Positions 47,346-50,478 of a stretch of DNA of 64,000 bases are shown piece by piece; within the stretch, counting starts at the first letter, position 1; every line of letters begins with the position of its first letter. This DNA is from Eutreptiella sp. 'Long Island Sound 2002' (lineage: Eukaryota > Protista > Euglenida). The notes beneath the pieces were generated by a model. That model saw only the letters and a program-made list of their open reading frames with translations. It had not been told where the DNA came from and did no database searches. The stretch is from positions 187,426,001 to 187,490,000 of the forward strand of contig OZ038378.1 of assembly GCA_964036045.1 (NCBI GenBank), read 5' to 3'. The translations under genes were made by a program, and so were the position numbers.

Positions 47346-48837
47346 TTCCCTAGTCGTCTTGCCACTGGTGACCCCCCTTTGGGTGCCCGTCGCCGTTCAC
47401 AACGGAGCTGCGGAAGTGCTCAGAGATGGGGCATGGATCGGGGGCGCGGGTGGGGACACAGCTATCCCCCTGCATTCAAACAAAACACAGTGCATTTCAA
47501 GGGCTCTGACGCCGGACGGCGGGCGTCGACTGTGGTCACATCATGAACCGCAGCCCGACACCCTCTGGCCGTGGGTGACACGCCGAACTATAAGCCCGTC
47601 TCTGCTAATGTCCGGTCTTCGGGGCTGTCTCAGAGGGATAAGAAACGGTGCTTGTTCGTCTCAGGCGGACTAGTCTTGAGGTGGCAGACTTGCGCGTTCA
47701 CCGACGATGATTTCGGTGGTCCATCAACGGGAATTGATGTCACTGTCCGTAGAGGACGGGACTTTGTCACGGGGGTTGGCCTTAATGAAGAAAAAAACTG
47801 AAACTGCCGGCCTCCGGTGCACACGGACCAGCTGGCGAGTAAGTGCAATCGGTGCCGTCGGTTCAGCGCCAGCCTCCGTCGGCTGAGTGTCAACCGCCAT
47901 CGGTTCACCGAATCCTGCTATCGATGGAGTCAGGCTGTCCGTCGCGAAGGGAAAAAAAGGTCATTCCAATAGGGACAGCACGAGTTTGTCACCCGCTGAG
48001 AACGTCCAAGTCAATGGCGAGGGCACGGGGATTGACGCCACGCCCACGCACCCCCACGGCCAGAAATGGCCGGCCAACTTTGCAGTGGGGCTTGGGCGTG
48101 TTCCGTGCCCTACCCCACCCCTGCGCCGTCAGTTGGGGCTGAGAGGCCCGGGCCACTGTACAGGGGAACAGATCGCCGTTTTCCCTCGACGGGGGGGGTG
48201 TTGCTATGCCGCAGCTCTATCCCTGTCCCTGTCCGACCGTTCCCGAACCCTTATCCAGCAACACTGGCCCAAATGGACAAAGCTCCAAAACAATCCTCCT
48301 TCCAATGAATGTTGGTCCCTTTATTTATTTATCGGCCTTTCCTTGTCAGTGATCCATTGCATCAAAACCTGAAGTCATGTATGCGCCCACAAAGTCGACG
48401 CAACTTCAGGGAACACCTTGGAAATACGGTACAAGGCAAAGGTAGGTCATCTGCATGTAGCGGTCAGATGCAAGCGGTCATCGCTGGAGTGGTACCCAAA
48501 TCCTGGTTATCATTGTCGTTATGGTTCATCTTCGTAATTCTGTACTTACGTACTTACTGACGAAGGCTTGCATGCTTGCTAACTAAGATGTGTTCCCAAT
48601 GGTCAGAAACACAATTGCATGCGAAACACTCTCTCGCAAAAACGGGGGGTTTGCAAGCCCTGAAAAGGACCTGCATTGAAGTTACCCCAGTAATTATATG
48701 TTTTGCCCTGGGAGGAGCCAAGGAACAGCAAGAACGACAGTCAGACAGGACGTGTGTTTCATGCGCAGTTTTGATGAATTGGGAGCAAAACAACCAAACT
48801 GAAGGGCAGGAAGCTTAACCTCTTACTTGTTTTGAAG

Positions 48838-48843
48838 CAACAA

Positions 48844-48894
<51 letters not shown>
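48838..48894. repeat. (CAA)3(CAG)15CAA trinucleotide tract, 19 units
   Basis: Read directly; no convincing surrounding CDS. Confidence 0.95.
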
Positions 48895-49211
48895 TGCCGG
48901 GGGTTGGGGGGGAGGGGGGCAGAGTTCCCTTTGCGTGTGCAGAGCAATGAGGGGTCGGGGTTTACCTGCAGGACCACACCAAGCAGTTTCGCGTCTCGGG
49001 GAAAGGGAGGTCTAAGGCAGTATCACCGATGTCCAGTGCCATGTCTTCTGTGAGTGACCTGCTTCTTGGAGGACGTCAGTTCTGGAGGGAGCGCAGGGTT
49101 TTGGGGGGCCAGGCTCAAGCTCCCTTGCCTAACACCACGAGCCTTTCCGGGGTACCTGTTGGTACAGTGCGTGCAAACACGGCCACTATTGAAGGCAAAC
49201 GTGGTATAGAT

Positions 49212-49233
49212 AAAATAGACACTCAGAAAGTGT
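49212..49233 (-). other. Genomic copy of the 5' 22 nt of the euglenid spliced leader (SL relic or SL pseudogene)
   Basis: The minus strand reads ACACTTTCTGAGTGTCTATTTT. It matches the recalled euglenid SL (E. gracilis ACTTTCTGAGTGTCTATTTTTTTTCG) but lacks the terminal TTCG|GT donor. Confidence 0.8.
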
Positions 49234-49845
49234 ACATAGGACTAGAGCTTGAGTGTATTAGCGCGGTGTAGGGCGAGGGACACGTGCGCACGGGTGGGGC
49301 CAATTTCCGCATCACCGGAAACGAGTGTTGTGCGATTCCCAGCCGTCCAGCCTGTTTCAGGGCCAACAGTAAGAGCGAGAACCCGTGAAGCAGGATGTCT
49401 GTTGGACGGTTGGCTAAGATTACAATCGGGGACCCGCACACCCGGAAGACCGAGTTGATATTTACCTCTTCACGCACTGCACATTTGTTCCATTCCAGCC
49501 CCCACCCCCGAGGCATAAGTGTCGTCGCTTGCTTCTTGATCATCGCATCACTTGCTGCATCCTGATCTCATCTGCACCGTTGTCGGGCGCCACTGCAGCT
49601 GGCCGCGTGATTTGGGGCATTTGTGGCGGCTTCGTGGCAATCTGGCGGCTGCAGCGTCCGCGTTCAAACAAAGCGACCACGTACATTTGGGTTAGACCAG
49701 AAGGGGGCTAAGGGCATGTTCCATACAACAATACGCACCGAAGGATACAAAATTGCTTGTCAAAAAGCCCATCTATTTCTATTCGCAAGATCGTCATCAT
49801 GTTCGTGTTTAGAGATTGGGCTTGGATACGCCTTTCGCAAAAAAC

Positions 49846-50460
49846 CTAGAAACTCTGAGACAGACAACTCAATGGCCGCCGGATTCTCTGCTGTTTCTCG
49901 CTTGCGGGTCGCGGCGAGCCCCTCCCAGGGGGGCTCTGAGCGCGAGCCCCGGCGGCCGGTGCGCACGCGTCACAGAACCTGTCCGTCAGCTCCTGCAGCT
50001 CCCCGTCATCCACCGCCACGCGCACGCGGCCCAAGAACTGCATCGGGCCGGCAAACGTGACGACGACCTCCTGCTGCAGCGCCAGCACCGGGAACGTCGC
50101 GAACTCCGGCCGCTCCGCGCCCCGGCACTCCCGCACAAAGGCCTCGGCGGCCCGCACGTCCCCCAGCGCGAACAGCACCTCCATGCACGGCCCGACCGGG
50201 GCCGCGGCGGCGGGCCGCCCTGCGTACGGCCGAATGACGATGTCGTGGCGCTGGTCGCGGAACGGCCCGTGCGTCTGCATCATCCGGTACACGGCGTTGC
50301 GGATCTGCGCCAGGGCCCCCGGCGACGCCTCCAGCTCCTGCTCGGCGACGCGCAGGAGGAGGCTCATCGTCCCCGATCGGCGGATGGCCTTGACCCGAAC
50401 AACGCCGGTGGAGCCGCACACCCGCTTCACGAAGGCGACGACCAGTTGCTTGAAGGAGTC
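49846..50460 (-). CDS. Cys-rich/RING-like hypothetical protein B, 3' exon (end uncertain)
   Basis: CCTTCGGCAG acceptor, phase 0. Strongly codon-biased DSFKQLVVAFVKRVCG...LQELTDR. Ends either at TAG 49848-49846 or at donor AG|GTTCTG (49978). Confidence 0.7.
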   Translation of the reverse strand, partial: DSFKQLVVAFVKRVCGSTGVVRVKAIRRSGTMSLLLRVAEQELEASPGALAQIRNAVYRMMQTHGPFRDQRHDIVIRPYAGRPAAAAPVGPCMEVLFALGDVRAAEAFVRECRGAERPEFATFPVLALQQEVVVTFAGPMQFLGRVRVAVDDGELQELTDRFCDACAPAAGARAQSPPGRGSPRPASEKQQRIRRPLSCLSQSF

Positions 50461-50478
50461 CTGCCGAAGGAGGGGCTG

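What the first reader, a model, noticed from the sequence alone, without database searches (positions are those of the whole stretch)
49160..49300. Isolated genomic spliced-leader copy without its splice donor
Seen: minus-strand ACACTTTCTGAGTGTCTATTTT (49233-49212) followed by ATCTATACCACG instead of TTCG|GT, with no 5S rRNA or SL repeat nearby. It lies 26 nt upstream of a CAATAG acceptor. Established: euglenid mRNAs receive the SL by trans-splicing, and trypanosomatid SLACS/CZAR/CRE retrotransposons target SL genes. Inference, three options: (a) an SL relic from a retroposed mRNA; (b) a degenerate or variant SL RNA gene; (c) a scar of an SL-targeting retroelement. It may sit in a 3' intron of gene B (30-nt micro-exon 49156-49185, GRVCTHCTN). 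Alternatively it may head a downstream ORF (MALDIGDTALDLPF..., donor AG|GTAAAC near 48965), giving a cis-encoded leader.
Basis: partly seen in the sequence, partly recalled or inferred. Interest (0 to 1): 0.75.

Follow-up and report, generated by a model that had tools for sequence, protein, structure and literature searches.

The report
Orphan fragment of spliced-leader gene
The leader-like sequence is real, but it is a stranded 160-base front piece (upstream flank plus the first 22 letters of the leader) of one of this Euglena genome's spliced-leader/5S RNA gene repeats, cut off before the parts needed for splicing, so it is an ordinary gene relic rather than a new kind of leader.

Summary
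Observation confirmed. The minus-strand 22-mer at 49233-49212 equals the first 22 nt of the published Euglena gracilis spliced leader (SL). It is followed by unrelated sequence, not by the rest of the T-run, CG and the GT donor. No 5S gene lies in the window.

The copy is far from unique: the 2.28-Gb genome holds 5,223 matches at one mismatch or less.

The decisive result is the flank. The 138 nt upstream of the 22-mer (49371-49234) are 83-84% identical to the non-transcribed 5' flank of SL-RNA genes in a 1.28-kb SL-RNA/5S tandem array on contig C6, and 76-79% identical to a second C6 array. Homology stops exactly after SL nt 22. Nothing else of the repeat unit is anywhere in the 64 kb.

So this is a solitary, old (about 11% private divergence), 3'-truncated DNA fragment of a divergent SL-RNA gene.
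- Option (a), a retroposed mRNA, is refuted, because an mRNA copy cannot carry the gene's upstream flank.
- Option (c), a retroelement scar, has no support.
- The proposed intron and micro-exon of gene B is not supported. That gene's paralog-conserved C-terminus and stop lie 475 nt upstream.

A relic of the same repeat was found earlier in this scan, 5.5 Mb away. Interest is low.

The parts
49212..49233 (-). SL exon nt 1-22 (canonical sequence, including the 5' hairpin nt 1-15 and the first four Ts of the T-run). The last 6 nt of the 28-nt SL, the GT donor and the whole SL-RNA body are missing.
49234..49371 (-). 138-nt non-transcribed 5' flank of an SL-RNA gene of the 'C6 class'. It is 83% identical to the consensus of array A (C6:126.74-126.77 Mb) and 76% to that of array B (C6:143.65-143.68 Mb).
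   Evidence: (nhmmer E=7e-41)
49304..49321 (-). Box 1: inverted repeat TTTCCG-N6-CGGAAA at -88..-71. It is identical in the window and array A and is absent from canonical SL loci. It is a candidate promoter element (inference).
49283..49292 (-). Box 2: perfect 10-bp palindrome CGTGCGCACG at -59..-50, conserved in the window and array A (one mismatch in array B). It is a candidate promoter element (inference).
49101..49211 (-). Single-copy sequence directly after the 3' breakpoint (49211/49212). It has no similarity to the SL-RNA body or to the repeat unit.
49846..50430 (-). Context: last ORF of the upstream gene ('gene B'), with no Pfam domain. A paralog on C21 conserves it to within 4 codons of the stop. 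The SL fragment begins 475 nt after this stop, on the same strand.
48894..49100 (-). Context: 207-nt segment with one 87% copy 139 kb away (C1:187336273-477). That copy lacks the SL piece. The segment contains the 'MALDIGD' ORF and shows no sign of coding constraint.

Best explanation
The site is a solitary, 3'-truncated fragment ('orphon') of a spliced-leader RNA gene, moved or left behind at the DNA level. It consists of about 138 bp of the gene's upstream flank plus SL nt 1-22. It derives from a divergent SL-RNA/5S rRNA repeat subfamily that now survives as two tandem arrays on contig C6. It lacks the last 6 nt of the leader, the GT donor, the Sm-like site and the 3' stem-loops, so it cannot donate a leader in trans-splicing. 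It carries about 11% private substitutions, spread as expected for neutral decay, so it is old and most likely inert. Shown: the homology, its two sharp borders, the absence of the rest of the unit, and its uniqueness in the genome. Inferred: the DNA-level origin (a captured array fragment, or the last remnant of a deleted array or orphon) and the lack of function.
For: - The whole-genome BLAST of 48950-49450 hits 49370-49212 against 38 array units on C6 at 76-84% identity, E down to 7.6e-40. The hits end exactly at SL nt 22.
- Those units are complete SL-RNA genes (SL, GT donor, AUUUUG Sm-like site, GGCCC-AU-GGGCC stem) linked to 5S genes at a period of 1.23-1.28 kb.
- A 1,413-position profile of the whole unit hits the window only at 49371-49210, E=7e-41. 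Nothing is found in the flanks even when they are searched alone.
- The covariance model of SL RNA aligns only model positions 1-24 at this site.
- The sequence downstream is no more similar to the SL-RNA body than shuffles are.
- The two upstream motifs occur in the genome only in the C6 arrays, the window and a few weaker C19/C22/C11 sites. The window is therefore the only dispersed copy of this class.
- Three-way comparison gives 18 window-specific, 17 B-specific and 6 A-specific changes in 160 nt.
- Window-specific changes are not placed with respect to A/B-conserved blocks (permutation P=0.49).
- The identity of 84%, not 100%, rules out a chimeric assembly.
Against: - There is no empty-site paralog and no target-site duplication or terminal repeats, so the mechanism of arrival is not shown.
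- Both palindromic upstream boxes and the 22 SL nt carry no private substitution. About 2.9 substitutions are expected in the 22 nt (P about 0.055). This leaves room for some retained promoter activity.
- The covariance model also aligned 9 nt (49199-49191) to the 3' end of the RNA model. That could mean an internal deletion rather than a terminal truncation, but the downstream flank shows no homology.
- Further loci (C19, C22) could not be fetched, so a closer source family is not strictly excluded.
Confidence: 0.82

Rival explanations
1. Orphan but live promoter. The retained upstream flank still recruits the SL-RNA gene transcription machinery, so a capped transcript starts at 49233 with 22 nt of SL as a cis-encoded partial leader. 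It reads into the downstream region, either as noise or as the 5' end of a downstream transcript.
For: Both palindromic boxes (-88..-71 and -59..-50) and SL nt 1-22, including the 5' hairpin, are intact. In kinetoplastid SL-RNA genes the promoter elements are upstream of the start (established knowledge, e.g. PMC1888695, listed).
Against: - There is no non-circular sign of constraint.
- The source arrays themselves look decayed: every SL exon read is mutated, their 5S genes score 36-59 bits against 102 for a canonical copy, and their variant SLs almost never appear in dispersed retrocopies.
- The downstream 'MALDIGD' ORF shows no coding constraint, and its paralog lacks the GT donor.
- There are no RNA data.
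Confidence: 0.08
2. SL-RNA gene with an internal deletion of about 70 nt (SL nt 23 to about nt 96 of the RNA) rather than a terminal truncation. The 3' end of the gene would still be present at about 49199-49191.
For: cmsearch aligned UUUGCCUUC (49199-49191) to model positions 97-105. Short colinear matches (CCTTCAATAGT, TTTGCA) to the region just after the array B gene appeared.
Against: Those matches score within the shuffle range (60 of 500 shuffles reach the score). The unit profile finds nothing after 49210, even in a 212-nt search space. Either way the gene is dead as an SL donor.
Confidence: 0.06
3. Scar of a site-specific retroelement that inserted into an SL-RNA gene, as SLACS, CZAR or CRE do in trypanosomatids.
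For: The break falls inside the SL exon. This genome is rich in LINEs that interact with the SL (earlier notes).
Against: - The sequence after the break is single-copy.
- No ORF of 130 aa or more lies on the minus strand, and there is no Pfam hit in 42.5-49.2 kb.
- The distal part of the SL gene is absent from the 49 kb on that side.
- The 5' border of the fragment is also a clean break at -138.
Confidence: 0.02
4. SL relic heading a retroposed, trans-spliced mRNA or LINE, as in dinoflagellate retrogenes and the SL-capped LINEs of this genome.
For: Many dispersed SL copies in this genome are of that type: 457 exact 28-nt SLs have no GT donor, and L011-L022 show a full SL joined to transcript-like sequence.
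Against: The 138 nt before the SL are the gene's non-transcribed flank. The SL is incomplete, at 22 of 28 nt. The downstream sequence is not a repeat or a recognisable coding sequence.
Confidence: 0.02

Closest known systems
Euglena gracilis SL-RNA/5S rRNA tandem repeat genes and their dispersed copies (Keller et al. 1992, as summarised in PMC2784804)
   Same: It has the same SL exon sequence (nt 1-22). Its upstream flank is homologous to one SL/5S repeat subfamily of this genome. [quoted passage not shown]
   Different: Only the front 160 bp of a unit of about 1.28 kb is present: no donor, no Sm site, no stem-loops and no linked 5S. The parent subfamily (period 1.23-1.28 kb, variant SL exons, different upstream flank) differs from the canonical class and from the published 0.6-kb unit.
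Orphons: solitary, often truncated members of tandem multigene families (histone, rDNA, 5S), from my own knowledge
   Same: It is a single diverged piece of a tandemly repeated RNA gene unit embedded in unique DNA on another chromosome.
   Different: How it was generated is not shown here. The fragment is much shorter than a unit.
Decayed 5S/SL repeat relics noted earlier in this scan (s1-195243, 5.5 Mb upstream on the same contig)
   Same: It is the same kind of object in the same genome: an SL-like sequence beside a gene that turns out to be a leftover of the SL/5S repeat.
   Different: That locus is reported to keep a donor and three local relics. This one is a single piece from a different subfamily, cut inside the SL. 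I did not examine that locus.
SL-capped retrocopies (dinoflagellate retrogenes, PMC5585692 and PMC12014239; SL-headed LINEs of this genome)
   Same: A genomic copy of SL sequence lies outside the SL-RNA gene arrays.
   Different: Those start with the SL and continue into the transcript, with an unrelated 5' flank. Here the 5' flank is the homologous part and the continuation is unrelated.
SLACS/CZAR/CRE site-specific retroposons of trypanosomatid SL genes (from my own knowledge)
   Same: An SL exon is interrupted.
   Different: There is no element, no second half of the gene, and no recurrence of the break site.

Membership tests
Functional euglenid SL-RNA gene | Complete 28-nt (26-nt on mRNA) SL exon ending in ...TTTTTTTTCG | tested here: not met
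   Only nt 1-22 are present, and nt 23 onward reads ATCTAT.
Functional euglenid SL-RNA gene | GT splice donor directly after the SL exon | tested here: not met
   For comparison, 1,058 genomic copies have SL28+GT.
Functional euglenid SL-RNA gene | SL-RNA body: Sm-like site (A/C-UUUUG) and 3' stem-loop | tested here: not met
   The covariance model built from 12 genomic SL RNAs deletes positions 25-96 at this site. Shuffle-level similarity only.
Functional euglenid SL-RNA gene | Upstream flank homologous to that of bona fide SL-RNA genes | tested here: met
   138 nt at 83-84% identity to array A on C6; E=7e-41.
Functional euglenid SL-RNA gene | Linkage to a 5S rRNA gene in a tandem unit | tested here: not met
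   No 5S in the 64 kb. 5S is present in the C6 units and in canonical loci.
SL-capped retrocopy (retrogene or LINE) | Full SL joined directly to transcript sequence, with a 5' flank unrelated to SL genes | tested here: not met
   The SL is truncated, the 5' flank is the SL-gene flank, and the 3' continuation is single-copy non-coding sequence.
SL-gene-specific retroelement insertion (SLACS/CZAR-like) | Retroelement (RT/endonuclease ORF or repeat) abutting the break, with the rest of the SL gene beyond it | tested here: not met
Orphon or pseudogene fragment of a tandem RNA gene family | Solitary, diverged partial unit in unique DNA away from the arrays | tested here: met
   It is the only copy of this flank outside the C6 arrays, apart from weak C19/C22/C11 motif hits. 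Its flanks are single-copy. It has 11% private divergence.
Orphon or pseudogene fragment of a tandem RNA gene family | Not transcribed or not functional | not testable with these tools
   No RNA data are available. The only indirect evidence is the neutral-looking placement of substitutions.

The most novel reading that the evidence does not exclude
The stranded SL-gene promoter is still active and starts a capped Pol II transcript at 49233. The first 22 nt of that transcript mimic the spliced leader. This would be a cis-encoded partial leader that could feed a downstream transcript, or masquerade as a trans-spliced mRNA in SL-based RNA-seq analyses.
Probability: 0.07. Interest if true: 0.5.

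Novelty: new member of a known kind. Interest (0 to 1): 0.15.

Why it matters
It matters little for biology but has some use for annotation.
- It shows that a genomic SL match in Euglena can be told apart by its flanks. The possibilities are an SL-RNA gene, an SL-capped retrocopy or a gene relic.
- Such relics can create false 'cis-encoded leader' or 'private SL cassette' calls next to genes.
- The comparison exposed a divergent SL/5S gene subfamily on C6 with two palindromic upstream boxes and oddly variable SL exons. That is a better target for follow-up than the relic itself.

Tried and rejected
- Rfam at permissive E-values around the site and at gathering threshold over the whole window gave only chance-level hits and no SL or 5S family.
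- Pairwise and multiple alignment of the sequence after the break to the SL-RNA body of three gene classes stayed within the shuffle range.
- A whole-unit profile searched against the window and against the two flanks alone found nothing beyond 49371-49210.
- Pfam on 15 ORFs around the site gave no hits.
- One large protein search with the gene B ORF returned only itself and two paralog fragments from another assembly, with no function.
- A search for flanking direct or inverted repeats found no target-site duplication and no terminal repeats.
- A test for constraint on the stranded promoter was negative (P=0.49).
- A test for use of the C6 variant leaders counted dispersed copies of two variants. 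Only 2 of each lie outside the array, which is no evidence of use.
- Keller et al. 1992 (PMC312261) is not held in the library. The chromosome-level genome paper does not mention the spliced leader.
I did not try another route.
Exons and ORFs were searched singly, by reference.

Full report
**1. What is in the sequence**

It is followed by ATCTATACCACG, and an AG lies 26 nt further on.
- The 22-mer is unique in the window even at three mismatches; none of 100 shuffles gave a match.
- It is identical to the first 22 nt of the Euglena gracilis spliced leader (SL) as printed in two papers: the 28-nt SL primer in PMC5654406 and the 26-nt SL in PMC6242988.
- The genome it comes from has 2.28 Gb in 2,317 contigs. 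That fits the published 2.37-Gb E. gracilis assembly (PMC11252322).

**2. How isolated it is**

Within the window it is isolated.
- No 5S rRNA or any other Rfam family passes threshold in the 64 kb.
- A covariance model built from twelve of the genome's own SL RNAs finds only this site.

Genome-wide it is one of very many.
- There are 5,223 matches at one mismatch or less.
- 1,515 copies are the exact 28-nt SL. Of these, 1,058 are followed by GT.
- 148 exact 22-mers are followed, as here, by a non-T.

The flanks of 30 sampled copies fall into recognisable classes.
- Canonical SL-RNA genes with a shared 5' flank, a GT donor and a strong 5S gene about 500 nt upstream (L001-L010; 5S shown for L006, 102 bits).
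- A full SL joined to transcript-like sequence, several copies sharing the same continuation (L011-L022). Earlier notes of this scan describe these as SL-headed LINEs.
- Several oddities, listed under 'noticed in passing'.

**3. The decisive result: the upstream flank**

A whole-genome search with 48950-49450 matched 49370-49212 to 38 places on contig C6. They lie in two tandem arrays:
- Array A: C6:126.743-126.766 Mb, 17 units, period about 1.28 kb, 80-84% identity.
- Array B: C6:143.652-143.680 Mb, period about 1.23 kb, 76-79% identity.

Every alignment ends exactly at the last T of the 22-mer.

The array units are complete SL-RNA genes. Each has an SL exon, a GT donor, a conserved body with an AUUUUG Sm-like site and a GGCCC-AU-GGGCC stem, and a linked 5S gene.

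The part of the window that is homologous is therefore the non-transcribed 5' flank of an SL-RNA gene plus SL nt 1-22.
- A profile of the whole unit (from -500 to +900) hits the window only at 49371-49210, with E=7e-41. It finds nothing in either flank, even when each flank is searched alone.
- The sequence after the break is no more similar to the SL-RNA body than shuffled sequence is.
- The covariance model deletes positions 25-96 at this site.

**4. Uniqueness and age**

Two motifs of the flank were searched in the whole genome.
- The 22-nt motif around a perfect palindrome, CGTGCGCACG, occurs only in the window, the two C6 arrays and one marginal C11 site.
- The motif around an inverted repeat, TTTCCG-N6-CGGAAA, also has weak copies (2-3 mismatches) on C19 and C22.
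- The window piece is therefore the only dispersed copy of this gene class found.

A three-way comparison over 160 nt gives 18 window-specific, 17 array-B-specific and 6 array-A-specific differences.
- The piece separated at about the time the two arrays did.
- It is old, with about 11% private change, and it cannot be an assembly chimera.
- Its private changes are not placed with respect to blocks conserved between the arrays (P=0.49).
- There are no private changes in the 22 SL nt, where about 2.9 would be expected. This is only marginal (P about 0.055, my calculation).
- No evidence of constraint results from these tests.

**5.

(a) A retroposed mRNA relic is refuted. A retrocopy starts at the SL and has an unrelated 5' flank. 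Here the 5' flank is the homologous part, the SL is incomplete, and the continuation is single-copy non-coding DNA.

(b) A degenerate SL-RNA gene is correct. More precisely, it is a solitary 5' fragment ('orphon') of a divergent SL/5S repeat unit.

(c) A retroelement scar has no support.
- The 6.7 kb beyond the break hold no long minus-strand ORF and no Pfam domain.
- The flank is not repeated in the genome.
- The distal half of the gene is nowhere in the window.
- The other border of the fragment, at -138, is an equally clean break.
- No target-site duplication or terminal repeats flank the piece.

**6. Gene context**

The ORF 49846-50430 (minus strand, 'gene B') has no Pfam domain and no homologs except two paralog fragments from another assembly.
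- Its paralog lies on C21, split there by 3.4 kb.
- Protein similarity to the paralog runs to within four codons of the stop at 49846.
- The SL piece therefore begins about 475 nt after the stop, on the same strand. That places it in a 3' UTR or an intergenic spacer rather than in a coding-region intron.

The 30-nt 'micro-exon' rests only on an AG and a GT.

The 'MALDIGD...' ORF lies in a 207-nt segment with one 87% copy 139 kb away. That copy lacks the SL piece. It shows four non-synonymous changes against one synonymous change, and a GT-to-CT change at the proposed donor. It does not behave like a constrained exon.

**7. How it most likely works**

It most likely does nothing. Without the last 6 nt of the leader, the donor, the Sm-like site and the stem-loops, it cannot act as an SL donor.

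The origin was at the DNA level, because RNA from an SL gene would not include the promoter flank. It is either a captured array fragment or the last remnant of a deleted orphon or array. Which of the two is not shown.

The only live possibility is that the two intact palindromic boxes still act as a promoter and start a transcript with a 22-nt pseudo-leader at 49233. I put this at about 7-8%.

The parent arrays themselves look run-down.
- None of the 30 units read has the canonical SL exon.
- Their 5S genes score 36-59 bits, against 102 for a canonical copy.
- Their variant leaders are almost absent among dispersed copies, with two of each outside the array.

**8. Comparison with what is known, and novelty**

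The literature already records tandem SL-RNA/5S units and some dispersed SL-RNA genes in Euglena (Keller et al. 1992, as summarised in PMC2784804).

This scan has already described decayed 5S/SL relics beside a gene 5.5 Mb away (s1-195243).

This is a further member of a known kind, and its interest is low.

**9. Limits**

No RNA data were available.

Noticed in passing
L033-L080 (G000:C6:126,742,968-126,766,061 and C6:143,651,921-143,680,446): Two SL-RNA/5S tandem arrays (about 1.28 and 1.23 kb) in which none of the 30 units read has the canonical SL exon. Within each array the 28-nt exon is about 7-10 times more variable than the 138-nt upstream flank (pi 0.073 vs 0.008 in A; 0.080 vs 0.011 in B). 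The RNA body is almost invariant. Exon types recur along array A like a higher-order repeat. The 5S copies are weak (36-59 bits). The variant leaders are nearly absent elsewhere in the genome. Why the exon is the variable part is unexplained.
   Followed up: partly
window 49283-49292 and 49304-49321; also G000:C19:38,693,541/38,694,580, C19:42,203,772-42,206,075 (3 units, 1.14 kb), C22:2,791,969: Two palindromic boxes lie upstream of this SL-gene class: TTTCCG-N6-CGGAAA at -88..-71 and CGTGCGCACG at -59..-50. They are candidate promoter elements. They are absent from canonical SL-gene flanks. Weaker copies suggest further small SL-gene families on C19 and C22.
   Followed up: partly
L029:1495-1626 and L030 (G000:C1:70,327,671 and C1:71,960,626): An SL variant (...TTTTATTTCG followed by GTATAC) with its own shared 5' flank sits in a hairpin of about 130 nt, facing a reverse-complement copy of itself. 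Rfam gives only sub-threshold miRNA-precursor-like hits. Many of the 148 '22-mer + A' copies occur as close +/- pairs (e.g. C5:34.36-34.94 Mb) and may be the same structure.
   Followed up: no
G000:C1:147,229,512-147,229,879: Six exact SL 22-mers (each followed by A) at a strict 69-nt period. This is a short tandem array built around a truncated SL.
   Followed up: no
L025/L026 (G000:C1:62,485,367-62,485,436): Two complete 28-nt SLs lie 42 nt apart, separated by the same 14-nt spacer that precedes the first one. This looks like a record of repeated SL addition or a local duplication.
   Followed up: no
L024, L027, L028 (G000:C1:58,715,533; 69,331,728; 69,333,985): An SL with a slightly altered end (...TTTTTTTTAGTG) is internal to a repeat family with a shared 5' flank (...GAATGCATGCATGA) and a shared continuation. 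It is neither a gene nor a simple retrocopy head.
   Followed up: no
G000:C2:188,591,370-188,621,161 and the first 0.5 Mb of C1 / 1.7 Mb of C2: Canonical SL+GT copies form an array with a 1,303-bp period on C2. Elsewhere they are spaced 8-60 kb apart near contig starts, as if single SL/5S units ride in a much larger subterminal repeat. The published unit is 0.6 kb.
   Followed up: no
window 48894-49100 and L032:1501-1705 (G000:C1:187,336,273-477); window 48896-48911 / 49093-49108: A 207-nt segment is duplicated 139 kb away at 87% identity. In the window it is bounded by similar G-rich 16-mers, and it is followed by a (CAG)n/(CAA)n microsatellite at 48836-48902.
   Followed up: partly
window 49965-50463 vs G000:C21:11,936,604-11,940,508: The gene B ORF is continuous in the window. 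Its C21 paralog has 3.4 kb inserted between the two homologous blocks, which are 8 nt apart in the window. This is an intron or insertion gain or loss between paralogs.
   Followed up: no
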